Below are positions 1 to 63,536 of a stretch of DNA of 64,000 bases, in pieces (positions within the stretch are counted from its first letter, which is position 1; each line of letters begins with the position of its first letter). Source of the DNA: Phallusia mammillata (Eukaryota); the NCBI GenBank assembly GCA_965637545.1, contig OZ281495.1, forward strand, positions 32,674,001-32,738,000, in the 5' to 3' direction. The translations under genes were made by a program, and so were the position numbers. Under the pieces are notes generated by a model. That model was not told where the DNA came from. It did no database searches and saw only the letters and a program-made list of their open reading frames with translations.

Positions 1-5
1 CACAG

Positions 6-3000: not shown

Positions 3001-6000
3001 ATACACAAAATTATTTATAAGGTCCCTTTGCCCTTCTTGGATGTAGACTGGTAAAGTAAATCAAAATGCTCAAAAATCGAAAACAACTAAGTCAACTCAA
3101 AGAAACGAAGTTACCAGAGAGCAAAAGTTACAGACTTTACTTAGAAGATTCCATGGTTAATTTTGCGTTTTCCTTGCAGACCTGACGATCGAGAGTTCAC
3201 TGAAGACTTGCGAGGAAGTTTGGTTGAGCAAAATATTCGAACTCCGCTCTCACACAAGAAGTCAGACTAAAAACATCGGACCGGATCTTGAAGGAAGTGA
3301 CGCAACCGGAAGTGAGATGATGCCGCATGCGATGTTGCAAACACACGAGGGAAGCAAGTATGTGACGTGGAAACACATATTGAACTTTAAAAGATGTAAA
3401 CTTAAAAAAATCAAAAAACAAATCTGCCAGAGAACTTGTTTGTCTGAGATTTATCCTTTCCGTTTTTCCTACTGTAGCCAAACAAATTTTACTAGTTAGA
3501 TTTACCCTGAAATTTTACTAGTTAGATTTATGTCTCCGGTTAAACATCTCTCTGCATGGAAACTTTTTTAGCAAACGTTTTAAACATTTCAATTGTTATA
3601 TCCAGTGTTTTTTTAAAGTGTTTTGGGGGACCGAAACGGTCCCCCAAATTTCTCCAGCGGTTTCCCAAAATTTGCCAGTAGCCTAATAAATAATTCGTTT
3701 AAGCAAATATGGCTATTTTTTGGTATTTAAATGAAACACTTGCGGTCTCTTAAAACTACTTAGCGGTCACCCAAACCAAACCTTAAAAAAAACCTGGTCA
3801 TATCATCGTAATGAGTCAGAAAAATATAAAACGGTGGTTAAGTGTAAAAAGAAAAACAAAAAACAAAGTAAACGGATGTGACGTAAATACTTTCGTTTCC
3901 GACTCAGAACTGGAGGAACTCGAACTAAGAGCATGAAGAGCGGACCTCACAGTAGATCATCCGATAAAACAGGAGCAGGATCGGTGTCTAGAGGCAGAGG
4001 AGGAGGCAGAACATCCGTCCTCTCGCTCCCCATCAGTCTCCTCAACCTGGTCGACGATCCCAGTCCGATTTGTCTCCTCAAAGATGTCGAAAAAATATTC
4101 TCCGATCTCGAGCACCACCAGGTGGACAAAATGATTTTGGTTTTGAAATCATGTGATGACGTTATGATGACGTCATCTAGTTGGGACGTCACTGTCTCTT
4201 AAATCCAAGTTTTAACAATTTTTCAAAAAAATTTACATTTTAAAACAAATTGCATAAATTTTGCATTAACTAATCCTGATTTTTGCGATGTCGTATTTGT
4301 TTTTTAATATCTGATGTTAACTTGGGGATTGTGACGTCACAGATGGAACTGACGCGAATGCAGAGCAACAGCGCGATTGGTTCGTTCCTTGACGAAGTTA
4401 CGAAGTGGCAGAAACGTTTGCATCTGATAGAAGCAGTGCTGGAGGCTTGGGTGAATGTGCAGAGCAAATGGGTTCAACTTGATGAAATATATTCAGGTTT
4501 GGTTCAAGGCAAAGTTACCGTAGAGATCCACAAAATCCATTGTCGTAATTTGTCGTCGCATAAGTCATTCCCCACGTCGTAACAAATGAGGCAGAGCTTT
4601 TTTGGTAGATAATAACTCATGCAGTTAGAACGTGGATAAATAATACGCTTTAAAAATAGAGGTTATTAAAATTGCTTATGATAGAAAGTTGTTTAGTTTC
4701 TTTCAACAGTCAATTGTAGAAATGAATATAAAACACTATTTTGGAACCTTTAGGGCTTCTGCAGAGCTCAAAAGTTCGTGTAGGGCTTATAGAAACTCTT
4801 ACTATCATACCAGACACTGTTGCACGAACTCCCTGTATATGTATTCTTGTATTACACCGTTTCAACCTATGAACAGGTGCAGATGTTCGCACAGCATTAG
4901 CACACGAGGCCAACATGTTCGCTGTGATCAGCAAAGACTTCAGGCTGCTGATGCGAGCCACAGAAAAGAACACAAACGTGCTTCAGGGATGCTCCAGGAA
5001 AGGTTGGTAACCGTTGCTACGTGCCACGTTGCCTTGACAACCGTTACGCATCATCGCGCAGGTCTCCTCCCGATGCTCGAGAAAATGGACTTCAAGATGG
5101 AACAGTGTCGTCACGCGTTGCTAGGCAACCTGGAGCGTCGACGTCAGCGCTTCCCACGCTTTTACTTCCTGTCGCCGGAAGATGTGATGAACATCGTGTG
5201 TTACGGATACGACCTGAACGCGGTCAACAAGTGGGTTGCATGGATAAGTTGATTTAAGTTTAACTGATAGCCTCGCTGCACAAATGTTGCGTTTGACTTG
5301 AAGTGAGATTACTAAAACTTGCAAAACAATTACCTTATTTAAGCCAGTGGTTCCCAACCGTAGCGGAATTTTAAAACTTGGATGGAGGAATTTACTTTAA
5401 TTTCTACATGTGGTTTGTAAATAGACACTTAAGCTCTGGAAATATAACCTGTGAAGTTAATAAAAGACTTGCTTTTAAATGATCTTTGTATGGTTTAGCA
5501 TCTACTATGTAGTATATTGGCGAGGAATGAAAATGTTTTGAATTGTTAAGTGAGGAATTCGTCGAAAAGTTTGGGAACCACTGATTTAAACGATTATATA
5601 ATTTGCTAAGTGGTAACCGTTTCTAAAAATTTGCTTTTTTTGCTATTTCTGATTTTGAGTTTTATTATGTTCTCATACGTACAGTTTTGTGAAGTAGACC
5701 GTTGTTTAAGTGTTTGTTAACTTTTAGTAAGAATCAATAGCAGCACATCTTATTAACTTTGTTTCATTTTCAGATATTTGTGCAAAGTTCTGCCGCATCT
5801 CGGTCGACTCGTCTTTACTGAGCAGCCCCTAGTAGTGAATAAACCTTCCCCGGGTCGTGCCTCCGCTGGTGGGCGCAAGAGGTACAAGGTCACCGGTGTG
5901 TCGAGCACGGCAGGAGAGGTCATGACCTTTCACCGACCCTTGATATACGAAGGACCGATGTCGCTATGGTTACCACAACTTCTTATGGCCATCCAAGCTA

Positions 6001-9000
6001 CATTGCAAGTCAGTTCACGTTTTGAAATATATTAACTTAGTAGTTGTTACTCGTCTCCATGTGTTTCTAACGGAATGTTGTATTAACACTGATGTGCTTT
6101 AAAGGATTGAGTTGAGTTTGTTTCGGTGGGTAAATGAATACATAGAGACGCAAATGCACTGAAACAGAAGTTGGCAACCTTTTTAGGCGATACGAGCAGA
6201 GAGATTTGTGCATGTTGACTGGATGTTAAGACTAGTGCTTAACAACAACCTAAAAATAAGCACTGTAACAGGTTAACTTGTCTGCTTGATATATCGTTTG
6301 GCGTGCCATGATATCTACCTCGTGTGCCAGGGGTTGCCCACCCCTGCACTAAAGCAATCATAAAGTCGGAAATACGTTGAGACGTTATGCAGCGCAAAAC
6401 AGTGGACAGAACAATTGGTGGATAATGACTGAATACGATGCAGTAACATCGTTATCTCTTCAATTCATACACCTTTGTGTTTGTGATGTTAATTTCTTAT
6501 GCAACTTTTTGTATCCCTGTTCCCAGGAGCATCTTCACGTTTCCCTTGGCAACGATCCTCGTCCTGCTCAGATCCAACAAACTCTTCGGAGCGTGGGAGC
6601 GTCCAGGGTGAGAATAAGTCGACCCTCTAGCGCCATCTCGCAACGATCTGGAGGATCCGATCCCGTCCAGAAGGTGGCGATGTCGCCCACGTTGCAACCA
6701 CAAGTGGCGTCAGAGAGCGATTCAGGAAAGGAAGATCAGCCACTAGGTGTCCCACCTCAGGTACGCCTGACCCATGTACAGACCAAAAAATCTGTATCGG
6801 GATTCGTCCCCGGGATTGTAGAAAAAGCATATGACAGAACGCTTGACATTATTCAATTCTCCGTATTAGTTCAATGACAAAAAGTGTTTATTTAATGATT
6901 GTGTGTTAAAAACACACCGTTTTGCCGAACATGCTTCCTTCAAAATCTATGGCTAGTGTTCCTGTATTAAAATCATCAGTTAAAGTAACACATGTACCTA
7001 ATCTTTCAAATCCTTACGAAAGACATTGTACAAGTCTACTATAAGGGTCAATGCCTCTCTAAGTTTTAGAGTTGAGAAAATGAAATTAAACATTGGAAAA
7101 CTTATTCTAGAGATCAGAGGTTGCTGCTCAACTCAACGCTACCTTGGGAGGCTCGATAGAAAACAGCCAAGTTTCCTGGACATTGGACAATTCAACGCAA
7201 GTTGTATTGCTTGCAACAACTGTAAAGGTAACTTGGGATTGCAATTTGATTACTTGCTTGAAGATGAAACCATTACGAAAACCGAACATTGTGTATTATT
7301 GTGATGAGATGTTTTCAATAATTAGTAAAAAACATTTTTTTTTCAATAAAGAGATACCGTAAAAAAATTTAAAATACAAATTTTTCAATGAAGAAATACT
7401 AATGTACTTAATTTTCGAAACTTACACATCAAACGTTCTGTTAGTATTGGGCCATCAAGTTTTTTTACCATGATAGTGGTAAGAGCGAAAAACGAACTTT
7501 CCTATTCCACTTGCAACTTGAGTTTGAAATTCTTACTTTAAACCTAATTATCTCACCTGGTTTTAGTTAAACAACCGAATGGAAGAAGCGTTGAAATCAA
7601 CATCTGAAGGGGATCACCTTGCTTTGGTGAAAGTTGCTGATGACATCAGTGATAACCTTCATGCCGCTGTGATTATGCTGAAGGTAAATAATCATCTTGA
7701 AACTAATATTCAATACACTATAGATTAACAAATTGGATGGGTTTAAGCAGTGGTGGGATTCAGCCGGTTTGCACAGGCTCTATGGAACCGTCTCACGAAA
7801 TTTTATGAGATCAGCGAACCGGTTAGCATTACTGGTTACTGTCAATGGATTTTTTTGTAACAAAACCGGCTGAAAAATATGACTTTTGTGATAAAACCGG
7901 CTGAAAAAATATGACTTTTGTAATAGAACCGGATGACAAAAATTTGAATTCCAAGTTGAGACAATCGCTCTTCTCTTCTACAGAGACTAATTATGAGTAA
8001 TTATGAGAACCTTTCCCTCCGATAGTAGATAGACTCAAGAATGTATTTGTTTTGTGTGTGGTTTCGTTTGTATCACAAACACAAATAAATAGCACTAACT
8101 TCTTAAAGATAGCAATTATTGTAACGCTTCGTCTCACGTCTCATCCAACCATACATCACTTTCAGGGTATAGAAGATGAGCGCATGGTTCACACGAAAAG
8201 TGCGAAGAAGAAAGTTGGGAGCAGAGGACGGGAGAAGGATCAGGATGAGGGAAGGAATCTCTCTGATGGATCTGACTCTATTGGAGCTCCTTCAACCAAG
8301 TAAGACATGAAAAACTTTTTTCGGTGGACTGTGAATAAATCAAGCATGTTTCGTAGCATATTTGAGTGAGAGGCGTCAGTATGAATTTGTTGACCATTAA
8401 TTTATCCCCAGCTCTCAGTAAAAGACAAATCTACCTTAAGAAAACATGTTGGCATATATTAATAGTAGGGATGGACCAAAACAGCAAATGTTATGTTTGG
8501 TCGAGCACGCTCGGTGCATTGTAACGTCACAAACATTTCCAATTCCGCGCTAGTTTTGTAACTTTCCAAGGTCCCTTGTGTCACCAGCTGTGTATTAGGC
8601 TGTACAGGCCCCAGAAGTACACGTTTTTCCACCATCTAACGCATTTAAAAACAGCCATTTTTGTTCTTACCCTTTCAAACAGAATTTCGTATACATGAAA
8701 AACAGCGATGCTCTGTACCTAGTACTCGGGTTCTGGCTCGGCTCATCCCTAATTAATAGCATGAGGAACATCGTGTATTAGAACTTTTGTCTGGTATATA
8801 TTAACAGATCGATGTTGGATGACGACATGGACATTGGAGAGGATTCCTATGTTGATGACGCAATGGTCGGAGAATCAGGTACGGTAGCAAAATAGATGTT
8901 TTGAACATTTAACAAAAAAAAACTACAACCTTTTTCACTAGCCCGCATTTGCATTAGTAACTTTCACTGAGAACCTTTCATGAAAATATGAATGACGAGT

Positions 9001-12000
9001 CGCCAGAGAGAATCAACATACCAGGCTGATACACAATAAATATGAGACTTTAATTAAGTTCACAGTCCAATTACCCAAACATTTTAATTTACACTGTTTC
9101 GTCACAATAATGTCATAATGATGTTATTGACGTCACAATGCAGGACGTAGCGGGCCGATAAATACGATGCAGAGTTTGCTTTTCACCGAGCAAGTTAGAT
9201 CGGGAAGCAGAGGAACGAGAGGAGATGTGTTGGATGGAGAGAATGCGAGAGATGGAACGGATCAGGTCGGTTGCTTCAAAGTTGCAGATGTTTAAAGTCG
9301 AAGAAATCTCTATTTGATATTCATTTATACTCGTTGTTGACTTCAGTTAAATTTGGCTTCTGATGTTGAAAAAAGCATAAAAGATTCTTAAAGCTGTTTA
9401 TCTTTAGCAAGATCTGTTAATAGGTTGTAACAATTTTGTTGGTTTTGGACCTTTTAAGCAAAAATAGAAACCTGGGTTAGCAAACCGTAGTATGCAATAC
9501 AATGCAGAACTGGCTTTTTTCCCTTGATTGTTTAAAATCGTGAATTGAGCACATAACGATAAAAAATCTCGGCACTTAACGTGATTAATTTTTTTAGGAC
9601 CAACAAGCATTGAGCACAGCGCCATCTGACGGCAAACTTTTGCTCTTTCCATCACAAATTCGCAAAATCAGCGGTCTCATTGGATTATTGACGCAACAAA
9701 GAGATCTTTGTTATCTTTTGCGAAGTTCGATCGCCAATCAATCTACAGAAAAGGTAAGAAATTTAAAAAAATATCTCAAAAAGTGGAAAATTACTCACAA
9801 GCTGTGAGGGACTTAGATAAATTCGAGACCCAATCATTGGTTATCGCACAGTGTTTTCGTCGCGTTGTGTCGTGCTTGCGTTGAATTTATCGTGCACTGT
9901 ACTACGCGCATTCAGTGTTATTTACCCTGATGAATGCGACCTGTATAGGACGTCGAAACGTCGGAATAAAAATACAATTGCCAGAATAGCTTTGTAAATT
10001 TGATATGAGAAACTAGTTTAATTTTTTAGCAACTTGTTTTTTGCTGTATCTAACTTCCGTAAGTTTTGTCTTTTTCATCAGTTGTTCGATTGGGAAGCTC
10101 ATCTCAAACACGTTTACACTCCTGACGACATGGGGGTCAAAGTTCAAACCATGACGTGGAACTTCGATTACGGATTTGAATATCAGGGCTCGTGTCAGAG
10201 GTACGGAAAATTGCAATGCGACTTTTAACGTTGGATGTGGTCAATTTCTGAGGTTTTTAGTCAATAAATGTTCTTCAACAACATAAATTTTAATGGTGAA
10301 AATAACCGCCCACACAGACGTAAAAAGCGACATGCTTTATTTGCCATGAAAGCATGTCGCTTTTTTACGTCTATTTATTTTCACCTATAAACCTATGAAC
10401 AGATCCGTATATATTGTTCCAACATAAATTTTGTACACGAATCACGGTTTCAAATACTTCATGCAGAAAAATGTAGGAAACTTTGCCATTTATCCAACCG
10501 ATATGCTGCTTTGTATCTTTTTGTTGAAAGAACGAGTTTTTCAAATAATTATTGCACCCCCAGATACGTTGTTACGCCCTCTTGTGACCGCGTCCTCCTC
10601 TCAATGTGCCAAGCTCTTCAATCCTTCTCCGGAGTTGCAATCTCCTCCTCATCAATGGCTCCTCCAGAAACGCTCTCTGAACTCTCATATCAACTCGGCA
10701 GAGGAATGTACTCGGTACTTTGCACACAATCTATGGATCATTTCATGCTCGGTAGGCTTTTCTGAAATGATTTTTTGTGTGTTTGGAACAAAATTTCTGT
10801 GGTTCATCAAGACCAAGTGTTGATGTTTAATGGGATCCTTTAAACAAAAACATAGAAAAGTGGTGGCAAATAGTAAATCTAAGGTTTTTGATGAAAGGTT
10901 TCAGAATAATAACATGTGGTAGCCAAGCACATCCCTAGCACCAAAGCGGCTTTATGTAAAAATTCTGTTTGTTTGCGTACAGAAATCTTTCGAAAGTTAA
11001 GGGGATGTGCACAAATTTAAGTCCTTAAAATCCAAACGCCTTGTGTACAAATTTTGTCATTTTTTTAGTGTAATAAACAGAAATATTTCACAGGCGACCT
11101 GTTCAAGGGGATAGCAGAGACGGGATGTTGGATTTGCTTACAGAGGTTCAACACTCTCCGCAACTCACTACTCTCTGTGGCTGGCCAACTCGCAAGTGAA
11201 GTTCAAAAAGCGTTGAGAGCCGGGAAAAGTTCCATCACACTAATGAGCGAGGACATTGACCTTTCACCTACTGCAGCCTGCTTCGTCACGCTTGACCCGG
11301 TTCCAAGAGTCCCGGATGTAAGGGCTATGCTAAACCGAAGTCAGCCAAGTGTAGCGTCCAGTTTGCCTGAGGGATGTGTTGGATATTTCAGGTAAACTCA
11401 TTTTACCAGAACTGACGTAATTTCACAGAATTCCTATATTGATTGTGACGTCATAAATGCAGGATTGTCTACGCAACACAGCCTGACAGAAGAACTGTTC
11501 TGGAAATCCATCTGTTGTCGCAAGGTTTTACTCAGGCTCACGAATTATCGAGAAAACTTTGTCATCTTCTGGATCTTTGTGGTTCGCTGCTTTCAACCAT
11601 TCCTGCCAATTCTCTTCAAACAGGTAAACTGTGGATTATTTTTCTTCTTTAAGTAGAAACTCAACTCGAAAACTCAGTACGACTCTAATAAGCAACAATA
11701 GTATTACATCAATAAAATGCTTTAGAAGGTCAAAAATAATTTAACTTTGAATGTAGGTAAAATGTAGGTAAGTTTTATAAATCGCCTAAAAAAACTTTTT
11801 TTGAAACAGCTCCAAGAGAAGAATTTGCCGCTGGAGGCAGCAAACTACACATCATGTACGGCGACAACGCTGTGACGTCACTTCCGCTGATTGAGCACGT
11901 GATCGCGGGTGCGGGCGTCTCGTTGGATGTTCTGATGCGTGAACAGTTGGAGTTGAAGCAGGAATACAGAGACATGATCACACAGAAGACCAGAAAGTTT

Positions 12001-15000
12001 ACCAATATATGGAAACACAGGTGACGGTCTGCAAGGCGGGAAAAATTTCACTTTTATTTGAATGTGCAAGGCTTCTTATTTTTCACGAAAGCTACGCGTT
12101 CATACTTTATTTCGCAAGACCAATTTCCCAATTTATTTCCGTCAACTTTGTTCTATCGCATACTTTTTTGAGTAGCAGCATATTTTCTGTAGCGAAGGGC
12201 TTTGTTTCCTTTTTCATAGATATGTTAATATAAGTTAGTTTCAATAACTTCCATACAAAAAATCACGTTTCTGCCCCTTTTTGAGATTGCTTACAAACGA
12301 TTTTTCTTTCCAAGTAGTCTCTGTTATTGCCAACACGTTCGATGCAAAATTTTTTGGGCGATTTTTAATTTCAATTCACTTGAACTTTGTTTCAGGTCAA
12401 GTTTAATGTCAAGTTCTGGAGGTTTGGCTGCAAGTTCAACAGCTGCTGACGACAGCGGAGCGGAAGGAGGACCTCTAGTGGCTGTAGGGGGGCCTCTAGT
12501 GGAAGGTGGACTATCTTCTTCTTCCCAGGAACAATCCTTGGACCAATCAACGCAAGAAGCGATCCAAATCAGCAAGGAGTAAGCACACGAATAATGTTTA
12601 ATTGTTTGATTGTGTCACGCGCTGTGAAGCCTCTTAAACCTGTTTAGTGGTTCAGTCCAGAGCTGACGTTGATGTACAAAGGTAAAAATTACTTTACTCT
12701 CTTGTATATTACTATTTTCAATAAAAATTTGTCCACAAATTAATCTATTTTATTGTATCGTATGTAAAGTTTTTGCCACCGACCCAATCCTATGAAATGG
12801 AAAGAGGACGGCGCCTAGCTTGAGAAACCCTGTGTAAAGTAGTTTGAACAACTTGGTAAAAACTTGGCCGAATAATGTGAGTCACATGATTCATGCACAC
12901 ATATACAAACATGATGTGGAGCATCCTGTGTTCAAAACCCTTTCATTTTGAATTAATTTTTTAGTCGTGGAATCATTGAGTCGTTTTCACCAAAAAGATT
13001 TTCGTCCAGAACATGATATATTGTTTTTCAGCGTATGTAAACTGCTTAGGCGCCGAGGTTGAGATGATCAGTGTACAGTAATTAAATAGAAAGCTTGGCA
13101 CATGACTCAAACACAGACTTAATGTTCGGGAATGTCCTGTGATCGAACTTCGAAATGGAGTAAATACTCCAATTATTGTTTCAGTCGTGAACTTATTGAA
13201 TCTGATGCTGAAAACATGAAGAAGATTGAGGAGATTGCTCTCATCACCGCCCTCCGCAACATCCTGCTCCCTCGACTCCCTGGAAAGGAGGAGCGGAGTC
13301 TCCTCTTCACATTCGTCACTGATCTCTTCCCTGCAGCATCCGAGGAAGTCGACTTCGTGGTGGATGATGAGGAAGTGAAAGATGAGGAGCTGATGCAGAG
13401 CATGGGAGGAGACATGAATTTGGAAGTGAGTGAAAACAGTGGAAACTGTGTAAGAGCAATTGTGTAGTTTATTTTGGTCAAGTTTTTGTAAGGTTCAATT
13501 TTTTGCTACAGCATGACATCCTTGTAGCAGAAGTTGTGTGTTGTAAGGATAAAATTGAGTTGATTGAAATTCCTTTAAATGTTTTTTACGTTATGAAATC
13601 TTTAGGTTATGAGACTGTTGTTATGGTTTAAAGTCACTTGTTTCAAGTCAAGGTCAAATTTGTATATTGTAACAAAATTGGGGGCAGAATCAGTGCCGGA
13701 TTAACCATTAGGCAAAGTAGGCACGTGCCTACAGGCCAGTCCAAAATCCAGGCCACTTTACAACAACGATCTTTGTGACAATGATTTGGCAACACTGATA
13801 ATTCTATTGTTTTAGTTGGCAACCCTGATTTTCGGGCCACTTATAAAATGTGACTACAGGCCAGCAGACCCTTAATCCGGCACTGGGCAGAATGTCAATT
13901 TCAGTAAAATATGGATAATTGTTTGATCCAAGTTCAATATCGTAAAACAAAAACTAATGTACGAGCAGATTTCGATTCCGGAGCACCGGTTGGAATCGGA
14001 TTCTCGCCCTTTCGAACCGAAACCATCCGAGCATGAACCAATCAACGACGTGGAAGCGGCCGTTGCCGTGGCAACCGCCGAATGCGGACTTAGTCCCGCA
14101 GCAGCCTTGCAGAACAAAACTGCGCAACTGGCCGAGGTGGGATTGTGTGATGACGAATGTAGTTATTGCTAGACTTGCTAAAGCTTTTATATAAGGACAG
14201 GGAACCTGTGGCCTAAATATCACATGTGGCCATTTGAGTCAACCACTGCGGCATTTATTGTAACTAAATGTTAAAATGTATTTCTTCTTGCACCTAATCC
14301 ATAAACGGACAAATAACATCCCATACACCTGTGGCCATTAAAGAATTGTTAGTTGGTCTTTATAGACAATAATTCAGCTGCTTTCTTCATATTTGTTAGC
14401 AACTGACGTGACATTAGTGTTTTTCGTGTTAACATTTTTTTCTTTCCCAGCTCGCCGAGTCCATGAGATCAGTAATAGTGTGTGGAGATGCTGGTTGTGG
14501 AAAATCCCGGTGTATTGATGTTTATGCTGAAACTCAGAGACAACTTGGTTTTAAAGTAACAACAAAGAAGGTAAGTTTCATTCTTGACATGTTTTGCTTC
14601 TTATTGTGTGTATGTTATCCAATTTGTACAGATAGTTTGGGGTGTTTTTTCGTACTTGGTGCTGCTTTATTTTACAATGCAATATGATTCTCGGGTTCAA
14701 ATATCACATGGAAACGCAAAACAAAAATCTTCTCGTAATTGTTGCGAAAAATATACTAACATCGACATGTTTTACCTTCAGACGCTCCACATTTACACAA
14801 GATCAGTAACAAATATCGCTTGAGATTGTAACATAAACATGTTTTTTTACCATCAAATTCACGCGTTCGTTTCTTCTTTTGGTCGAAATGTTGTATTCCA
14901 TGTAATTCATTGACTGATTCTGTTATTTGATAAAATATTTTTATTTCTTAGCTTCCTATTTATTGTCATAAACAATGAACTTCAATGACCATGCTGTCTG

Positions 15001-18000
15001 TTGGAGGGGCTGATATTGTTCAGTATAACCACTTGCGAATATTGTTTCAGGTTTTCGTGAACGCAGTTGATTCCCGTCGTAAAGTTTTCGGATATTTCGA
15101 ACCTGAAGGCCGAGAGTGGAAAGATGGATTAATTCAACAAATGATCAGACCGCATTGTGTGGAACAAGACGCTCCTACTTCTACAGGGGTGAGTGTATAT
15201 TAATACGGAAATCGTTTGAAGTCCGATTGCTACAAAAACATCTTTATTGGATGGGTAAGTTTCGTCGGGTTCATCACTAAGCCTGTGTAGCTTAGTTTGT
15301 AGAGCGCGAGTCCCGGAAAGACTCCTGTCGTGGGTTAGAACCCCGCCGCAGGCTAGTTTTTTTCTAGCCTATGCCTTACCAAATGGGAATGCTTGGTGAC
15401 CGTCTGATTCGGCACAACGTCTTTAATAGGCCTGGCGTACTTTGATTATTGGGTGATGTTGACTATTTAAGTCATATCATTTTACCCTGGACGTTTAAAA
15501 TGTGCAAGTCTATGTAAGTCTGTCACTAAAACGTGAATATTGAGGACTTGAGGATCATACAGAAATCGTGAACGTTTGTTTAACCCTTGGAAAAAAGATA
15601 TATTCCTTATAGAAGCCTATAGAAAGGCACACCACTTCCAATGCGCCAACTAAATTGCGTTTTCCCCACTAATTAATCACCAAAAGCTCTCAACCTTATT
15701 TGTTCACTTGCAGAGATCCACAAAACCGAGTGTCCTCCTCCTCCATGTTGACGGGAGGATGGAAGCAGAAGATGCCGATATCTTCCTTCAGCTCCTCCGC
15801 TCCGAACCGGGATCAGCTGCATCTGGTGGTCCAACATCCGGACATGTGGGAAGCTCCTCCTGGCTGTCGTTGCCTAACAACGAGAGATTGAATCTTCCTC
15901 TTGATCTCCGCGTCATCTGGGAGGCTGCCGATTTATCATGTCTTGCTCCGAATCTTCTTTCACAACTTGGAGTTCTCGGATTTAGTGGAACTGGTGAGTT
16001 GATAGGAATGGATTGAAAATATGTTACGTTTAACTTGGGCACTGTTCAAATCTGAAACAAGCATGTCATTATCAACTCGACATGGACATTCCAAAGTCCT
16101 GTATGATGACAAAACGATTGGCAAAAATGTTTCTTACAGCTAAATTCTGGATTGGAAAATGAAAACTGTTGAAAACATACACAAATAGAACCAATAAAAC
16201 GTTATTTAAATACCGCGTAAGTTTGAGTAAAAAATAAAGTGTTACGTTTCATGCTGCTCACAGTGCTCAGCAAAGGTTATGGCCTATCACCTCAATCGTA
16301 TACCTTCTGTGCGTCGCATCCCTTCAGTCATTTGGACCTCTGATTAATTTTCAGAACTCAGCTGGGATCTTCATCTCACTCACTGGCTCAAGAACCTTTC
16401 TGACGTCACCCGCTCTTTCACCCATGACGTCATCATGCGTTATCTTCCCCGGCTAGTGACGTTTTTCAACTCTTCGACCACTCCTCCCCACCTCGTCGGC
16501 GACAATGACGTCACGCCCCGATTACGTCAGACCGTGCGCGTCAGTACGTCATCGATGACGTGTACCTTCTGCAAGTTGCTCGATTGTCTGTTGCCGAGTG
16601 ATTCCTCGCCCGTTGAGAGAGAGAGATATGTTGCTTATGGTGCGTTCTGGGCCTTTGGAGGAACTTTGGAGGCGGATTCGAGGGAGCTCTTCTCCTCCTG
16701 GTGGTGCAGGATTTGGCCAAACTCCTTCCCAACTGCCCTCGGTGATCCCTGGCGCCAGTTTGTGGACGCGGAGAGCCGAAACTTCGTCCGCTGGGAGGAG
16801 CACTTGCCGCAGTTTTCTGGTTCCGCTGGTGGTTCGGGAAGTGTGTTCGTTCACACGCCTGACGCGAGTCAACTCATGCATCTGATTGGTGCGCTGATGG
16901 ACGCCGGTCATGCTTCGATGCTCGCCGGTCCGCTCGGGTGTGGCAAGAGCGCCATCGTGCGGGAGCGTGTTAACAACGTGAGCAGTGGTGAAGTGGCGGA
17001 AGTGCTGAGTTTGTTTGTCCATTGTAACCGACTCACGGAGGCTGGGAATTTGTGGACGCGGATTACGGAACATCTCGAATGGAAACATGGAGTCACATTC
17101 ACTCCACGCGGGAACAAGAAGCTGCTTTGTATGGTTGATGACCTCAATCTCGCAAGATCTATTGGATCAGGTGGGTGATAAAATTGTGTTAATTCTGTCA
17201 TTGGTTGATCAGAAAAGTTAGGTGTTAATATGCTGCTGTCGTGGGTTCGAATCCCATCGTAGCCTAGACTTTCTGACCTGCGCTGAGCAATTGCTTAGAA
17301 TCTGAGGCTAATATTCCCTGTAGGCCTAATAGACAATTTCTTTCTCCACATTTTTATCTTTCAATGCTTCTCTTTTACTTTCAGAAGGTGAATCCCCCAA
17401 CCTGCAATCAGCTTGTGAATTGGTTCGTCAACATCTTGACGTGGGAGGAGTAAGGAATCCTGTCACCTATAAATGGCAGCAGGTATAACAACAAAACTGC
17501 AACACTTAAGTGCTTGTGGCAGATACAACTATATAGCTCATATATATTTTACAAATCTTCAAAAAGTTGGTGTTTTGTGGTGGCAACAATTGTGTTAGTG
17601 ATGATTTTACATGTTCAACAGTAAGGGTATGCTATTTGGTGCGTTTATACCCTGGTAAAGAGGTCACAAAGAAGAAGTCGACACGCCGAATAATAAAGAT
17701 AAAATTGCCGCAAAAACAACGATAGTTAGAATGTCCTGCCTAGCAACGAGGTACTATTATTCGCAGGTTAGCAACACCGCTTACGTCACAACGATCAATC
17801 CCCGGCCCTTCTCGTGTTCAAATGTGATGAGTCAGCGCATGACGAGGCACTTCTCGGTCTTTTCGTGCCCGTATCCGTCCGTTGCCACGCAACACTCCAT
17901 TTTCAGGTAAGTAAACAACATTACTTGGGGTAGAAGTTGTGACTTTGTAAACGTCCATTTCTTTTTCCGCAGCACACTCATACAAAGTCGGTTGCTTCTC

Positions 18001-21000
18001 ACACACGGTGGTTCCCCTACTTCGTCCGATGCTCTCAACGAAAAACCAATGGAGGTGAGAAAAATGTCGAAACCTTACCTCAAAATCTTTGGGAAATGTT
18101 TATTTCCAGGTTTATATCAGTTGACAATCTTATAAAGAACCAAATATATTTTGCTAAAAACCATCTTTAGTGTTTATAAGGGCAATAAAAAGTAACTTGA
18201 GTTTCATTTTGCAGGAGCAACGTAGCCCAAGTTTCTTGTTTTAATACAGTTATTCCCAACCTAGACTCGCTTAAACTTTTCTGTGAAGAATCACTGTTAA
18301 AATAAAAGACTAAAAAAGTGTCAGTATGTGAACCATCAACCTTCTGAACATCACAATATTTTCTTCCTCTTCACAGACCCTCCTCTCGAACATCACCATA
18401 GTAACGGTGGAGCTGCAGGAGCGATTGAGGGGGATGTACCTGCGCACCCCCGAACGAGCCCACTACACATTCGCCCTCGGCGACCTTGAGAAGATATTCC
18501 GTAACCTCATGACGTCACTGGCACCGGGATGTCGCCAGCGCGAGTTGTTGTTGCTATGGCGACACGAGTGCGATTGGACGTACATGAAGCGCATGGTGGG
18601 TTGGCATGATAACAGCAATCAAAAACTTTAAATAATTTAATTTAAATTCTCAACTGGGTGAAATTGCCTTTATGGTATGTTTCTGTTTTTTCTTCTCCAA
18701 ATCCTCTGTTGTTTTTGAGTCCATGGTATGTAAATTTGGATTTTATTTTAGAACTTTTTTTCCATACCATTGACTATTATTAGTTTAACTTAACAAAACA
18801 GTCGGTTTGGTGAAATATTCTATTTTATAATTTGGCTGGTCACAGGTTTCCAACGTCGATTGTGAGAGATACCAGCAAGCCATGGATACTTCGGTGCGCA
18901 AATATTTAACCGAGAACAAATTCCTATCCCTGCTGCTAGCCTCGAAGCAGCCTCTATTCAGCAGCGTCCGTGAGTTGGAGAGTGGAATTATCACCGCAGG
19001 GAGGTAAGCGAACTTTCCATCAACTTGTGGCTTAAATTGGTGGTTACAATGAACTTTTCGGTTTTGCAGAAACTTCGGACGAAATTCGAGCAATCGCAGA
19101 TCTGACGTCACCACTGCTCACGTGACCGACTATTACAAGGTTGCAGCCAATCAGAAGGAAGTACACGACCTTCTACTGGAGGCGTTAAAGGTGGGACACT
19201 CAAACATACATTGTACTCCATAACTATTCTCGATATTTTACATTTCTTTTCAGGAATACAACAAAGTAAACGTGAAGATGCGACTGAACTTTTACGATGA
19301 CACCATCAAGTTAATCTGCCGAGCTTCTCGAATTCTTCAGAGTTCTCAATCCCAGTCTCATTCTGTGATGTTTGGGGACGGTTGTCCAGCCATGGCCGCG
19401 CTAATCGTCAACATATGTAAGTTGGGAGAAGTTGAAACAACAAATAGCGAAGTTAGAAGGGTTTGGTTCCAACCCTAGTGTGGGAAACATAACAGAAACT
19501 TTTTGAAGCTGACCTTTTTTACTCTGAAATTTGCAAATGAAACAATTCCCAAGACTTCCGATAACAAACAAAATCAATGTATAAGCATCAAGCCAAAAAA
19601 TAACAAGTAAGCTGCAGACGGTACACACCGTTTTCACCTAATAGGTTGGATGGCTATACATTAGCCAATACTACCAATGTCTTGTCACCAGCTGTCCCAA
19701 ATGAAACCTTATAGGTCAAAACAGTGTGTACCGTCTGCAACTTACTTGCCGCAACATCAAGTTTCGCAATTTGCATCACCTTTTCCTTTTGTTTTTTTCG
19801 CAGCTGCCCACTTGGGTGGTTTCCGTGTTGTCACCCTCCCCCCACTCATAACCCCGTCATCGGGTGATTCCCCCCATCACCCGAACCCCACCAGTTCGAC
19901 CCCAGCCTCACTTGCCGAACCCGACCAGAAACGTCTCCAACATTTCAAAAGATTCCTGGTTCAACTTTACAACAATGCTGGGGTTAAAGGTCAAAAGATC
20001 GTCTTCATACTCCATGATGATAAGTACGTCATAATACAGTATTGCTTACGTAACAATATATTTTTTCATTACTGCTTACTTCCTAGCCTAATGATACACG
20101 TCATAAGTTGTAAGTTATTTGTTTATGGCGTATTTACTACAGAGAGCTGAACAACGAATGTTTGACGGTGATCGAAGAGTTGGTTTGCTACGGGGCGATT
20201 TCACACCTATTCACACCCGATGAACAGACAACCATAGCGAACTCTGTACGAAGCGAAGTGACTGCGGCTGGTCTCACTTATTCCAAGGAAGTCGCGTGGC
20301 ACTTCTTTCTCACAACGGTTCGCAACAATCTAAGGATCGTCCTCATTTGCTCCAACACCGGTAAGTGTCAATTTAAGCTAAAACAGTAATAGATAAGCTA
20401 TTGCTGCCAGGCATAATATCAACTTTATAGTCACTTCGTCGTTTTCGTCATTTGACAGTGATGTACAAGAGCGTTTTTGTCTCAACATTTATGCACAGTG
20501 TCTTTCTTTGTCTGGCGTCGAATTTTCCAGTTGATTCTTAATCACAATGGCACCCAGATTCGAATGGAAGACTAGGTCAGACAGTTTGTGCAAAGAGTGC
20601 AGTGGAAGGTCAACTTCAAATACGTGTTCGTGGAACGCTTCAGTTTGACGCTGGATGAACATATACATACACCAGAAACAGACTTTATCTGAATGTTAAA
20701 GTTAATGCGTGGGACAAACAAATCTAGGAGTCTGGGTATGGTACGAGTCAATGGTGGTTAATCTGCTTAAATGAGTCTCCAACTTGTTACCAAACATCTA
20801 AATGACTTCGGTTGGATTTTAAAAAGCAAGTTTTTGGCTGTGTAACCGACGGTGCCGCGGTAATGGTAAAATTCGGAAGGTTGGCCACGGCCGAGCACCA
20901 ACAGTGATTTGCTCATGCCCCTCGATCTTGCTGTGTGCGATGTAATATACAAAAAAACCTTGTTGAATAATTGCTGCCGACACGTCAACACGTCAATGCT

Positions 21001-40053: not shown

Positions 40054-41401
40054 GCCTTTATCCTGTAGGTTGGTCTTTATCTTTTTAACCATATGCTTGC
40101 AATAATTCCAACATTTTACTTTGTTATGTAGGAAACAAGACATTCCATCTGATCTTATGCGACAATTTTGTGGAAAATTTCACTGTGATTTTTTGAAGTG
40201 TTTTAGTTTTATTGCATCCATCAAAATGGCACACTTTTTATTCCAAAATATTTTACCTGACTCTGTGCAAAACTGACAACAACAAAAAGTTTTTTACACT
40301 ATTGTCCACAACTACTGTGATGCATGTTCAGTAGTGCTCATTTTTAATTAAATTGTGTTACTTTACCTTGTTAGTGAACAGTTTACCTTATTGGTGCTCT
40401 GTATAATTTACCTGCTTTATATAAGTTTTTAACTCTACTGTGAAATTACAAACAATTGTACCTACCACCATTACTTTGCATTTTCTCATTATCTTCAACA
40501 TTCCAGCGTGGTTTGTTTCATGGTGTTCCTTTGATCTCTGCTTTAGATCTGTTTCAAAAAATTGTATGAATGATTTTGGGGTTGTGGAAATAAATAATTG
40601 TGTGAGGATTGTTTTGTCTATTCCATCAGTTTAAAGAAGTTTGATTTCAAGTATTATTGTCTTGAAATCAAGACTTGCAACAATGAATTCAAATTAATGT
40701 GAAGACCGGAACAGAATGCTTTTGCCAAAGCAGTCCAATGCACATTTCATATCTCAATACAAATGATTCTGGTTATTAGAAACTCTAAATTGCTTGTCTT
40801 ATTTACTTTTTATTAACCTGGATATTTTCTAAACAAATAATACCTACATTTTGGATTCATTATGCATAAACATGGAATTTTCTGGAAAAACTTTTGTAAT
40901 GCACTTGAAAATACATTGCTTACTTATACTCAACCTTGTCATTACAAACAAAAGACCAGAACTGTGAAGTGACAAAAACGTAGTACCTGATTTTCCATTG
41001 CATTGGTTTTTCGTTTCTAAATTTTGGATCCAAATAAAATCCAGAATCCAGATATATGCAAAATTCAATTGCATATTTAATCCCAAGACCTAAAAAACTG
41101 ATTTGCCTTCTATGGTTGAGTTGAGTAAATATATCTTCAAACTCCTCTGAGCAGTATGGCCCTGAAAACTAAGCGTTAATTGAGCTTTTTGTTAAAATTT
41201 AGAATTACTACTTCACAGAAACACAAAAGTTTAAAATTTGACCGGCGGGTCGCAGTACAATATGCCAATGTCAAATATCCTATGCGGCAGGGTTCGTGAT
41301 AAGTCATGCGTAACGCGCCGCGGTGTTTGTTGATACTTTCCAGTGTGCAAAACTTTGTATTAAACGGAATATTTTAGTTTTCAACAATTTTCACTGAAAA
41401 T

Positions 41402-45578: not shown

Positions 45579-63536
<17,958 letters not shown>

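What the first reader, a model, noticed from the sequence alone, without database searches (positions are those of the whole stretch)
10082..15993. Full-length dynein heavy chain with every AAA1 catalytic element lost: a candidate pseudo-motor
Flanking sequence is clearly AAA1 (FDYGFEYQG-RYVVTP-CDR..CQAL), but each catalytic element is replaced. Walker A GPAGTGKT reads SSSSMAPPET (10564-10751). Walker B CFDEFNR reads CLQRFNT, and sensor I ITMNP reads VTLDP (11094-11391). Sensor II GLRA aligns to SLPL (11810-12020). The AAA2 arginine finger SRCG reads SQLG (~15960). The AAA4 P-loop is also dead (GDGCPAMA, 19374-19397). AAA2 (GDAGCGKS) and AAA3 (GPLGCGKS, VDDLN, finger R in LFSRM) remain, though AAA3 sensor II reads LGDL. 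AAA1 hydrolysis is what drives dynein motility. An open ~4600-aa frame over ~82 exons with stalk and MTBD intact suggests a maintained non-motor role, such as an axonemal brake, tether or scaffold (inference). It may or may not be orthologous to the divergent vertebrate DNHD1.
Basis: partly seen in the sequence, partly recalled or inferred. Interest (0 to 1): 0.8.

Follow-up and report, generated by a model that had tools for sequence, protein, structure and literature searches.

The report
Dead-engine outer-arm dynein of a sea squirt
This expressed sea-squirt gene encodes a giant dynein "motor" whose main ATP-burning site is destroyed but whose microtubule-gripping tip is carefully conserved; it belongs to an old animal family (corals to frogs) that seems never to have been described as non-motile.

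Summary
Spliced transcript contigs from four runs confirm the exons at 10082-15993. They encode a dynein AAA1 module with every catalytic element replaced: Walker A (SSSSMAPPE), Walker B (CLQRFNT), sensor I (VTLDP), sensor II (SLPL) and the AAA2 arginine finger (SQLG). The AAA4 P-loop is also gone. The AAA2 and AAA3 P-loops remain.

The gene is neither DNHD1 nor DNAHX. The window is from the ascidian Phallusia mammillata. A deposited transcript-derived protein (CAB3238693.1, 4242 aa) maps exactly to 3933-40050 in 75 exons.

The protein belongs to an old animal family of about 5,100-6,100-aa heavy chains, found from corals to frogs and not in amniotes. The family branches beside outer-arm beta dyneins and fits Kollmar's class 13 (longer AAA5, low-complexity C-terminal tail). 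All members lack the AAA1 Walker B acids, the sensor II arginine and the AAA4 P-loop. Ascidians have also lost the AAA1 P-loop lysine.

Synonymous sites are saturated while pN is 0.14-0.29. The stalk/MTBD is the best-conserved part and folds as a canonical MTBD.

Best reading: a maintained, non-motor, microtubule-binding outer-arm-type heavy chain, possibly the unidentified partner of DNAHX. I found no paper describing this family's dead AAA1. The scan had not noted it on other DNA.

The parts
2..3311 (+). Eight upstream exons (end of the tail coiled coil and first half of the linker) that are not part of the deposited 4242-aa protein
   Evidence: They match positions 1211-1551 of the family profile at E = 1e-10 to 1e-28. 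They are open and can be joined in frame with GT..AG to the exon at 3916-4121. Pfam finds DYH2-5-8_CC and DHC_N2. Whether they are transcribed was not tested.
3933..40050 (+). Coding sequence of Phallusia mammillata CAB3238693.1 / UniRef A0A6F9DAJ5 (4242 aa, 75 exons): linker, AAA1-AAA6, stalk/MTBD, C-terminal domain and extension
   Evidence: 4232 of 4242 residues map exactly and collinearly. Accession; Pfam architecture.
10082..10200 (+). First AAA1 exon (FDYGFEYQG)
   Evidence: Sequence; spliced contigs.
10564..10751 (+). AAA1 Walker A exon. The P-loop remnant SSSSMAPPE lies at 10643-10669: Lys and Thr are both Pro, and the loop is one residue shorter.
   Evidence: The orthologous ascidian loci L001 and L002 have an even shorter loop.
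11094..11391 (+). AAA1 Walker B remnant CLQRFNT (11135) and sensor I VTLDP (11285), followed by a family-specific insertion
11810..12020 (+). AAA1 lid exon with the sensor II position TSLPL (Arg replaced by Pro, 11875)
14451..14570 (+). AAA2 P-loop exon (GDAGCGKS at 14484), retained
15714..15993 (+). AAA2 exon carrying the arginine-finger position for AAA1 (LSQLG, Arg replaced by Gln, 15957)
16355..17170 (+). Large AAA2-lid/AAA3 exon with the AAA3 P-loop GPLGCGKS (16927) and Walker B VDDLN (17134), both retained
18377..18598 (+). AAA3 lid exon. Sensor II reads ALGDL (Arg replaced by Gly, 18473), as in all four ascidian sequences.
19254..19415 (+). AAA4 exon with the P-loop remnant GDGCPAMA (19374-19397). 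The loss is family-wide.
22520..25922 (+). Stalk coiled coils and microtubule-binding domain (MTBD core about 23553-24453). Canonical length, and the best-conserved part of the protein.
   Evidence: Pfam MT covers residues 2226-2524 and profile positions 46-340 of 344. Alignment and identity table. AlphaFold model with pLDDT 91. Its best Foldseek matches are solved dynein MTBDs.
25923..26999 (+). Insertion of about 165 aa between the stalk and AAA5, largely acidic and low-complexity; present at varying length in all family members
38340..40050 (+). Low-complexity C-terminal extension of about 245 aa beyond the Dynein_C domain

Best explanation
The window carries the Phallusia mammillata (ascidian) member of an ancient animal subfamily of axonemal dynein heavy chains. 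The subfamily arose from the outer-arm beta (DNAH9/11/17) lineage and is most probably Kollmar's class 13 (DHC13). It is distinct from DNHD1 and from DNAHX.

Shown:
- The gene is transcribed, correctly spliced, open throughout and under strong purifying selection.
- Its AAA1 site lacks the Walker A Lys/Thr, the Walker B Asp-Glu, the sensor I Asn, the sensor II Arg and the trans arginine finger.
- AAA4 has no P-loop. AAA2 and AAA3 keep their P-loops.
- The stalk and MTBD have canonical length and fold and are the most conserved region.

Inferred:
- The protein cannot run the AAA1-driven power-stroke cycle, so it is not a force-producing motor.
- An AAA1 that cannot take up nucleotide should resemble the apo state. 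From what I know of AAA1 P-loop mutants of cytoplasmic dynein, that state binds microtubules tightly and is insensitive to ATP.
- It therefore most likely acts as a microtubule-binding, non-motor subunit (tether, brake or regulator) of an outer-arm-like two-headed complex in cilia or sperm flagella of externally fertilising animals. Its partner may be DNAHX (probably class 12, by matching descriptions).
- Nucleotide binding at AAA2/AAA3 may still tune it, but in ascidians the AAA3 sensor II arginine is gone too.
For: Exons and expression:
- Spliced contigs from four runs confirm the exons.
- The 702-aa AAA1-AAA2 chain is open.
- The deposited 4242-aa protein maps exactly on the window.

Motifs.

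Family identity:
- The nearest proteins are 5.1-6.1k-aa 'dynein beta chain-like' proteins from corals, molluscs, annelids, echinoderms, amphioxus, sturgeon, gar, lungfish and amphibians. No amniote appears.
- In the tree the window lies inside this family (100*) as sister to its vertebrate members (97*). The family clade is sister to outer-arm beta (98*), and DNHD1 is separate.
- Against solved dyneins, Chlamydomonas beta scores 1011 bits, DNAH9 989 and DNAH17 984, against 630 for DNAH5.
- Not DNAHX: the Lytechinus variegatus members are XP_041470146.1 and XP_041471110.1, not XP_041462850. No further sea-urchin cluster appears among the 120 listed hits of 411.

Class-13 hallmarks (PMC5100056): a longer AAA5 region and a low-complexity C-terminal extension are both present.

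Selection:
- pS is 0.76-0.85 (saturated) against pN 0.14-0.29, also within AAA1 alone.
- Conservation is inverted relative to outer-arm beta. MTBD and CC1 are 0.54-0.65 identical within the family and AAA1 0.28-0.41, whereas AAA1 is 0.82 in outer-arm beta.

MTBD fold: pLDDT 91; best matches are 3ERR, 6RZB and 6RZA.
Against: - There is no functional, localisation or tissue information. The runs are coded, and their 'RNA' label is a guess that rests on the spliced contigs.
- The class-13 label is inferred from published descriptions, not from reference sequences.
- The tree lacks DNAH5/8 and DNAHX sequences and was a quick LG+G4 search with several long branches.
- The N-terminus is unresolved. 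The deposited protein and all four contigs begin mid-linker, 100 nt before the ATG at 3933. The expressed product might therefore lack the tail needed to join a complex.
- AAA2 and AAA3 keep their P-loops, so some nucleotide-dependent behaviour is not excluded.
- The rigor-like prediction rests on my knowledge of mutant cytoplasmic dyneins, not on a test.
Confidence: 0.7

Rival explanations
1. It is the ascidian orthologue of vertebrate DNHD1 (Kollmar class 11), the known orphan heavy chain with a degenerate AAA1.
For: Both have a degenerate AAA1 without the Walker B acids. DNHD1 is reported as such in bioRxiv 10.1101/2025.01.18.633724.
Against: - DNHD1 from Colossoma and Crotalus forms its own clade, far from the window's family.
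- With the gar orthologue as query, DNHD1 scores E = 3.7e-35 and 1.3e-13, against 0.0 for family members.
- Fish have both genes: Colossoma has DNHD1, while gar and sturgeon have this family.
Confidence: 0.01
2. It is a member of the DNAHX subfamily (the non-motile heavy chain found in sea-urchin sperm, derived from outer-arm alpha/DNAH8).
For: - The phyletic pattern is similar: aquatic, externally fertilising animals up to frogs, absent from amniotes.
- Both are unusually long and have degenerate AAA1 motifs.
- The deposited Phallusia protein is even named 'DNAH8-like'.
Against: - In L. variegatus, where DNAHX is XP_041462850, this family is represented by other accessions.
- DNAHX is absent from the 120 listed hits (of 411) of a starfish family query.
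- DNAHX keeps DNAH8's spacing of 172 residues from Walker A to sensor II. Here the spacing is 207, because of two insertions.
- DNAHX has stalk/MTBD insertions and a folded-back stalk. Here the stalk/MTBD is canonical.
- The nearest canonical class is outer-arm beta, not DNAH5/8.
Confidence: 0.03
3. It is a decaying gene: a pseudogene, or a 'ghost' remnant on its way out.
For: - Catalytic sites have been lost progressively. Corals keep GKT in AAA1, bilaterians keep only the Lys, and ascidians keep nothing.
- In ascidians the AAA3 sensor II is lost as well.
Against: - 75 exons and 4242 codons have no stop.
- Splicing is correct in four samples.
- The same exons are open in three other deeply diverged genomes.
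- pN is far below the saturated pS, even within AAA1.
- The MTBD exon is 87% identical between ascidians whose synonymous sites are saturated.
Confidence: 0.02
4. It is still a motor, but one driven from AAA3 (or AAA2) instead of AAA1.
For: - The AAA2 and AAA3 Walker A loops, the AAA3 Walker B (DD, as in canonical axonemal dyneins) and the AAA4 arginine finger into AAA3 (LFSRM) are retained across the family.
- The linker and AAA3 are among the better-conserved parts.
Against: - To my knowledge no dynein is known to produce a power stroke from AAA3.
- The AAA3 sensor II Arg is replaced in all four ascidians and in several other members.
- The Walker B glutamate is absent from AAA3, as in other axonemal dyneins.
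Confidence: 0.1
5. The expressed product is a tail-less, N-terminally truncated protein from an internal promoter near 3833. It would act alone, not as a subunit of an arm-like complex.
For: - All four contigs begin at the same point, 100 nt before the ATG at 3933.
- If the contigs are collinear with the genome there, an in-frame TGA lies at 3879-3881.
- The deposited protein starts with that Met, at position 171 of the 403-position linker profile.
Against: - Eight upstream exons are open, splice-compatible and match the family profile strongly. That would not be expected in a fast-evolving tunicate genome if they were unused.
- Contigs of this kind break at graph branch points, so a shared end may only mark alternative upstream sequence.
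- Other family members have full tails.
Confidence: 0.25

Closest known systems
Kollmar 2016 class-13 dynein heavy chains (DHC13), PMC5100056
   Same: - Restricted to animals.
- Related to outer-arm class 4 (beta).
- Longer AAA5 region and a poorly conserved, low-complexity C-terminal extension.
- Typical stalk.
All these features were checked here and fit.
   Different: That paper states that the ATP-hydrolysis and microtubule-binding sites were not analysed. The dead AAA1 and AAA4 and the hyper-conserved MTBD are additions. My tree also finds ichthyosporean and choanoflagellate relatives just outside the animal family.
DNAHX / dynein-X (Chai et al., bioRxiv 10.1101/2025.01.18.633724)
   Same: - An outer-arm-derived, over-long heavy chain.
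- Degenerate AAA1.
- Found in externally fertilising animals and absent from amniotes.
- Proposed to be non-motile.
   Different: - DNAHX derives from the alpha/DNAH8 lineage.
- It still binds ATP at AAA1 (Walker A Thr>Val, sensor II Arg>Lys).
- It has stalk/MTBD and AAA4S insertions that disable microtubule binding.
- It has different accessions in the same sea urchin.

Here the origin is the beta lineage, the Walker B acids and (in ascidians) the P-loop lysine are gone, AAA4 is dead, and the MTBD is canonical and highly conserved.
DNHD1 (class 11, orphan heavy chain of vertebrates)
   Same: A divergent heavy chain with disordered insertions and an AAA1 lacking the Walker B catalytic residues. 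It is needed for ciliogenesis and sperm flagella.
   Different: A separate and much more distant lineage. It is present in mammals and reptiles, where this family was not found.
Outer-arm beta heavy chains (DNAH9, DNAH11, DNAH17; Chlamydomonas beta)
   Same: The nearest canonical class by score and by tree. Same domain order, and stalk/MTBD of the same length.
   Different: In the canonical class AAA1 is the best-conserved module (0.82 identity, bee against vertebrates) with intact GPAGTGKT and CFDEFNR. Here AAA1 is among the least conserved modules and every catalytic residue is replaced.

Membership tests
Dynein heavy chain (general architecture) | Linker (DHC_N2), AAA1-AAA4 modules, stalk/MTBD, AAA5, AAA6 and C-terminal domain in canonical order | tested here: met
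   Pfam on P0251 finds DHC_N2, AAA_6, AAA_7, AAA_8, MT, AAA_9, Dynein_heavy and Dynein_C in order.
Outer-arm beta dynein (class 4: DNAH9/11/17) | Groups inside the class | tested here: not met
   The family is sister to the outer-arm beta clade, not inside it, although outer-arm beta is the best-scoring canonical class.
Outer-arm beta dynein (class 4: DNAH9/11/17) | Intact AAA1 catalytic site | tested here: not met
   AAA1 Walker A, Walker B, sensor I and sensor II are all replaced.
DNHD1 (class 11) | Clusters with DNHD1 orthologues in a heavy-chain tree and in similarity ranking | tested here: not met
   DNHD1 forms a separate 100* clade and scores E = 1e-35 and 1e-13 against 0.0 for family members.
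DNAHX | Orthology to XP_041462850 of Lytechinus variegatus | tested here: not met
   The L. variegatus members of this family are XP_041470146.1 and XP_041471110.1. No further urchin cluster appears among the 120 listed hits of 411. The DNAHX sequence itself was not available for alignment.
DNAHX | Insertions in the stalk and MTBD (pre-H3, H5) giving a folded-back stalk | tested here: not met
   The Pfam MT match has no length change. There are no indels against outer-arm beta in the stalk/MTBD. The model is a six-helix MTBD between two long helices that matches solved MTBDs.
DNAHX | AAA1 with DNAH8-like spacing (172 residues from Walker A to sensor II), Walker A Thr>Val and sensor II Arg>Lys | tested here: not met
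   The spacing here is 207 residues (P682 to P889 of P0251). The P-loop Lys and Thr are both Pro, and sensor II is Pro.
Kollmar class 13 (DHC13) | Affinity to outer-arm class 4 (the paper states it for the tail) | tested here: met
   Outer-arm beta is the top canonical class, and the match includes a tail stretch: sterlet residues 550-1224 against DNAH17 1029-1687. In the tree the family is sister to outer-arm beta. The window itself holds only the last part of the tail.
Kollmar class 13 (DHC13) | Longer AAA5 domain | tested here: met
   About 165 extra residues lie between the stalk and AAA_9, and about 190 between AAA_9 and Dynein_heavy, relative to DNAH11.
Kollmar class 13 (DHC13) | Unique low-complexity C-terminal extension, not conserved between homologues | tested here: met
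   245 residues follow Dynein_C in P0251. Other members have 200-600 unalignable low-complexity residues.
Kollmar class 13 (DHC13) | Clusters with the CyMoBase DHC13 reference sequences | not testable with these tools
   The reference sequences are not in any collection I could reach. The assignment rests on the described features and on excluding classes 11 and 12.

The most novel reading that the evidence does not exclude
This family is the missing half of 'dynein-X'. It is an outer-arm-beta-derived heavy chain with dead AAA1 and AAA4 and a conserved, canonical stalk/MTBD. It would pair through outer-arm-type tails with DNAHX, the alpha-derived chain that is locked pre-power-stroke with a disabled MTBD. 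The pair would form a wholly non-motile paralogue of the outer dynein arm in sperm or cilia of broadcast-spawning animals, from cnidarians to amphibians.

The beta-type head would be the microtubule anchor. Its AAA1 was already non-hydrolytic before animals arose and has decayed stepwise since: the P-loop is intact in corals, keeps only the Lys in most bilaterians, and is erased in ascidians.

Three observations fit this idea:
- Kollmar predicted a class-12/class-13 heterodimer.
- The cryo-EM study saw an unidentified second head with a canonical extended stalk.
- That study recorded a minor 'DNAH9' at 3.18% by mass spectrometry, and the Strongylocentrotus purpuratus member of this family is annotated as DNAH9.
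Probability: 0.3. Interest if true: 0.75.

Novelty: new variant of a known kind. Interest (0 to 1): 0.55.

Why it matters
Dynein's power stroke depends on AAA1. A heavy chain kept for hundreds of millions of years with AAA1 (and AAA4) destroyed, while its microtubule-binding tip is its most constrained part, shows that the dynein scaffold has a selectable non-motor use.

Non-motile heavy chains have so far been proposed for DNAHX and DNHD1. This would be a third, independent lineage with a different design: the MTBD is kept rather than disabled. It also shows a graded series of decay across phyla, which could guide experiments on what each AAA1 element is needed for.

It makes two open points directly testable. 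One is the identity of the second heavy chain of dynein-X. The other is Kollmar's predicted class-12/class-13 outer-arm-like heterodimer. Ascidians (Ciona, Phallusia) and Xenopus are tractable systems for knockout and sperm or cilia imaging.

Tried and rejected
- Teleost gene. I first took the window for a fish gene. The exact match to Phallusia mammillata CAB3238693.1 corrected that.
- DNHD1 orthology was my leading guess. The homologue searches and the tree rejected it.
- DNAHX membership was rejected (and features).
- Exon-sized protein queries gave little. The search for homologous proteins with the 247-aa AAA3 exon returned only unnamed fragments because of the length filter. The atlas search gave only generic dynein clusters. 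The AAA2 finger exon alone found nothing in the PDB sequences.
- dN/dS could not be computed as a ratio. Synonymous sites are saturated in every pair (pS at or above about 0.75), so only the bound pN << pS is reported.
- Naming unnamed representatives to obtain DNAH5/8 sequences for the tree failed. The tree therefore lacks outer-arm alpha/gamma. I used the ranking against solved structures instead.
- A search for a hidden P-loop exon in 9000-12500 found none.
- Ciona papers searched for a sperm-specific odd heavy chain gave nothing useful.
- My ab initio splice refinement missed about 17 small or divergent exons, and one acceptor was off by 15 nt (13984 instead of 13969). The exact mapping of P0251 superseded it.

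Full report
**What is in the window.** The + strand from the first bases to about 40 kb is one multi-exon dynein heavy chain gene. GC content is about 0.40. Pfam finds a DYH2-5-8 coiled coil and the DHC_N2 linker in the first exons, and AAA_7 with its lid in the 247-aa exon at 16435-17175. A Tfb4/GTF2H3 exon at 41378 marks the next gene.

Reading 10020-12100 directly gives these exons:
- ...FDYGFEYQGSCQ|RYVVTPSCDR...SFSGVAISSSSMAPPETLSELSYQLGRG...
- ...GCWICLQRFNTL...ACFVTLDPVPRV...
- ...DNAVTSLPLIEHV...

Alignments to solved dyneins place SSMAPPET opposite AGTGKTET with a one-residue deletion, CLQRFN opposite CFDEFN, and VTLDP opposite ITMNP/ITLNP.
- AAA2 GDAGCGKS
- AAA2 finger position LSQLG
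- AAA3 GPLGCGKS and VDDLN
- AAA3 sensor II ALGDL
- AAA4 GDGCPAMA
- LFSRM

**Transcription and splicing.** A search for sequencing runs found four runs of one study that hold about 30% of the words of 10050-16000, which is roughly its exonic share. Laid on that stretch, each run has one contig of 12.8-13.2 kb that skips ten GT..AG introns with no mismatch. This gives exons 10082-10200, 10564-10751, 11094-11391, 11463-11623, 11810-12020, 12396-12578, 13185-13425, 13969-14136, 14451-14570, 15051-15188 and 15714-15993. The 'RNA' label of the runs is a guess, but spliced contigs are hard to explain otherwise. The chain translates to 702 aa without a stop. No frame on either strand of 9000-12500 can encode a canonical P-loop, so there is no alternative exon that could restore it.

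**Whose gene it is.** An exhaustive profile-free search with the AAA3 exon, followed by name look-ups, did not lead to DNHD1. It led to long proteins annotated 'dynein beta chain, flagellar outer arm-like': spotted gar (5254 aa), lungfish (5930 aa), newt (5410-5702 aa), Saccoglossus and a flatworm.

Searches with the gar and starfish proteins widened the family. It includes sturgeon, axolotl, many frogs, amphioxus, sea stars, crinoids, sea urchins, bivalves, gastropods, a brachiopod, an annelid, a nemertean and corals. No amniote member appeared. The next-best hits are DNAH11/17/9, at about 860 bits against more than 1500 for family members.

While aligning echinoderm AAA1 regions I noticed that one family hit had the window's own sequence: 'dynein heavy chain 8, axonemal-like' of Phallusia mammillata. 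Its 4242 residues map onto the window at 3933-40050 in 75 exons, with 4232 exact matches. The accessions are CAB3238693.1 and UniRef A0A6F9DAJ5. The window is therefore ascidian, not fish. That explains the compact introns and the long branch.

Three orthologous loci fetched through exon-sized fragments (L001-L003, from ENA assemblies) are presumably other ascidians; this is inference. The gar protein aligns collinearly from its residue 1210 at window base 2. The tail therefore lies upstream of the window.

**Not DNHD1, not DNAHX.** Two families of heavy chains with degenerate AAA1 are in the literature:
- DNHD1, called an 'orphan' or 'ghost' gene in PMC8754002. Its AAA1 is said to lack the Walker B catalytic residues.
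- DNAHX, found in sea-urchin sperm. It derives from outer-arm alpha/DNAH8, is locked pre-power-stroke, and has stalk/MTBD insertions (bioRxiv 10.1101/2025.01.18.633724).

In my tree of 41 heavy chains over 1408 columns:
- the window falls inside the new family (100*), as sister to its vertebrate members (97*), as expected for a tunicate;
- the family, with an ichthyosporean and a choanoflagellate sequence just outside it, is sister to outer-arm beta (98*);
- DNHD1 is a separate, distant clade.

This was a quick LG+G4 search with some long branches and without DNAH5/8 or DNAHX, so I also ranked solved dyneins with the sturgeon protein. Chlamydomonas beta scores 1011 bits, DNAH9 989 and DNAH17 984. 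DNAH10 scores about 685 and DNAH5 630.

For DNAHX the clearest evidence comes from Lytechinus variegatus, where DNAHX is XP_041462850. There this family is XP_041470146.1 plus XP_041471110.1, and the S. purpuratus member is XP_030834564.1 (5936 aa). No other urchin cluster appears among the 120 listed hits (of 411) of the starfish query. The features also differ:
- DNAHX keeps DNAH8's 172-residue spacing from Walker A to sensor II. Here it is 207, because of insertions after sensor I and before sensor II.
- DNAHX has a disrupted stalk/MTBD. Here the stalk/MTBD is canonical.

**Fit to Kollmar's class 13.** PMC5100056 defines three divergent animal classes:
- Class 11 is DNHD1.
- Class 12 has an outer-arm class-3-like tail and an abnormal stalk without a typical MTBD. 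This matches the description of DNAHX.
- Class 13 has a class-4 (beta)-like tail, a longer AAA5 and a low-complexity C-terminal extension. The paper predicts a class-12/class-13 heterodimer.

Pfam coordinates of P0251 and the sturgeon protein, compared with DNAH11, show the following:
- a stalk/MTBD of unchanged length;
- about 165 extra, mostly acidic, residues between CC2 and AAA5;
- about 190 extra residues between AAA5 and AAA6;
- 245 low-complexity residues after Dynein_C.

The C-terminal tails of other members are long and unalignable. The family thus meets every described class-13 feature. I could not compare it with the reference sequences. The same paper states that the ATP-hydrolysis and microtubule-binding sites were not analysed. 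A literature search for DNAHX, dynein-X or DHC13 found nothing further on this family.

**The catalytic sites across the family**.
- *AAA1 Walker B.* The Asp-Glu pair is absent in every member: gar CFDSIDR, newt CFNGLEQ, amphioxus GFLHLDI, starfish CLNNLSH, coral CLNNIST. It is also absent in the holozoan relatives just outside the family.
- *AAA1 sensor I and II.* Sensor I is followed by an insertion of about 20 residues. Its Asn is replaced in most members, though two ascidian loci (FVTLNS, FVTFNS) and one coral keep an Asn near that position. The sensor II Arg is absent in all animal members that are aligned at that position (the lungfish row is gapped there).
- *AAA1 Walker A.* It decays stepwise. 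GKT is intact in corals and the holozoan relatives. Most bilaterians have GK followed by K, R, Q, F or L. In ascidians nothing is left: the window reads SSSSMAPPE, and L001 and L002 have an even shorter loop.
- *AAA2 arginine finger.* It survives in amphioxus, echinoderms and newt but is Gln in the window and Lys in the other ascidians.
- *AAA4 P-loop.* It is missing family-wide (EGCPG...).
- *AAA2 and AAA3.* Their P-loops and the AAA3 Walker B (DD, as in canonical axonemal dyneins) are kept throughout.
- *AAA3 sensor II.* The Arg is kept in most members but is Gly in all four ascidians.

**Selection and what is conserved.**
- Between the window and L001-L003, and among those three, the synonymous difference is saturated (pS 0.76-0.85). 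pN is 0.14-0.29 over 500-800 codons and 0.20-0.29 within the AAA1 module alone. A ratio cannot be computed, but the contrast shows strong purifying selection even on the dead module.
- The orthologous exons are open in all four genomes.
- Domain-wise identity is inverted relative to canonical outer-arm beta. Within the family the MTBD and CC1 are the best conserved (0.54-0.65) and AAA1 among the worst (0.28-0.41). In outer-arm beta, AAA1 is the best (0.82).
- The MTBD exon is 87% identical between the window and L002.
- An AlphaFold model of P0251 residues 2255-2470, built with 26 family sequences, has mean pLDDT 91 and shows six short helices between two long ones.
- All listed Foldseek matches in the PDB are dynein stalks or MTBDs. 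Examples are 3ERR (rmsd 2.6 Å), and 6RZB and 6RZA bound to microtubules (TM 0.73-0.78 by target).

**How it most likely works.**
- *Shown:* the AAA1 site has none of the residues needed to bind and hydrolyse ATP. AAA4 cannot bind nucleotide. AAA2 and AAA3 probably can. The microtubule-binding tip is intact and under the strongest constraint.
- *Inferred:* there is no AAA1-driven power stroke. AAA1 P-loop mutants of cytoplasmic dynein bind microtubules tightly and are ATP-insensitive (my knowledge of that literature, not tested here). A nucleotide-free AAA1 should likewise favour a rigor-like, high-affinity state.
- The protein would then act as a static or AAA3-tuned cross-bridge, brake or anchor, assembled through an outer-arm-type tail.
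- The phyletic pattern resembles that reported for DNAHX: externally fertilising aquatic animals, none found in amniotes.
- Kollmar predicted a class-12/class-13 dimer. The cryo-EM study left the second dynein-X head unidentified, noting a canonical extended stalk. It also recorded a minor 'DNAH9' at 3.18%. The S. purpuratus member of this family is annotated as DNAH9.
- I rate the partner idea at about 0.3.

**Open point: the N-terminus.** All four contigs start at the same place, 1922 nt before 10080. That is 100 nt upstream of the ATG at 3933, which starts the deposited protein. If the contigs are collinear with the genome there, an in-frame TGA lies at 3879-3881. That would mean an internal start in mid-linker and a tail-less product.

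On the other hand, eight upstream exons (2-3311) are open, match the family profile at E = 1e-10 to 1e-28, and splice in frame to 3916. Contigs of this kind also break at graph branches.

**Verdict.**
It is wrong about possible DNHD1 orthology, and incomplete because the loss is a family trait.
- The protein is already deposited but uncharacterised, and the family was classified in 2016 without its active sites being examined.
- Non-motile heavy chains are a known kind since the DNAHX work. This is a third, independent lineage of different design, so I class it as a new variant of a known kind.

Noticed in passing
window 916-47261 (30 of 32 sites lie between 916 and 39369): The palindrome TGACGTCA (CRE consensus) occurs 32 times, against about 1 expected (largest shuffle 4). 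Of the 28 sites inside the span of the deposited protein, 20 lie in exons, which make up 35% of that span. The orthologous loci L001 and L002 have 5 sites each in about 21 kb, and L003 has 1. The cause is unknown; candidates are codon context such as Asp-Val-Thr/Ser, CREM-type germline regulation, or something else.
   Followed up: partly
window 3833-3933: All four transcript contigs share one 5' end, 100 nt upstream of the ATG at 3933 that starts the deposited protein. A TGACGTAA half-CRE lies at 3879-3886, and its TGA is in frame. This could be an internal promoter giving a tail-less isoform, or an assembly-graph break point.
   Followed up: partly
window 15281-15354 (+), 34938-35011 (+), 35554-35621 (+), 48885-48959 (-): Four Rfam tRNA matches (42-59 bits), three of them in dynein introns. 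The one at 15281 coincides with extra transcript-contig depth at 15224-15422 that ends in unrelated sequence, so these look like dispersed tRNA-derived repeats. Another expressed repeat lies at 13632-13885.
   Followed up: no
window 41378-41596 (+): An exon of a Tfb4/GTF2H3 (TFIIH p34) gene lies about 1.3 kb downstream of the dynein stop codon.
   Followed up: no
L002 14170-14337 and 14462-14545: In one orthologous ascidian locus the exon holding the AAA4 P-loop remnant (FGEGCPVLAAL) appears twice in tandem. This could be a local duplication or a pair of alternative exons.
   Followed up: no
Lytechinus variegatus XP_041470146.1 (2115 aa) and XP_041471110.1 (4257 aa): In the sea urchin used for the DNAHX work, this family's gene seems to be split into two models. 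The S. purpuratus orthologue is named 'DNAH9'. Either could hide the protein in mass-spectrometry or BLAST-based identification.
   Followed up: no
Proteins P0028 (Chromosphaera perkinsii), P0103 (choanoflagellate UC4), P0036: Unicellular holozoan heavy chains branch just outside the animal family. They already lack the AAA1 Walker B Asp-Glu but keep GKT/GKS and the sensor II Arg. Two of them (P0103, P0036) also have a degenerate AAA4 P-loop. This suggests the loss of AAA1 hydrolysis predates animals.
   Followed up: partly
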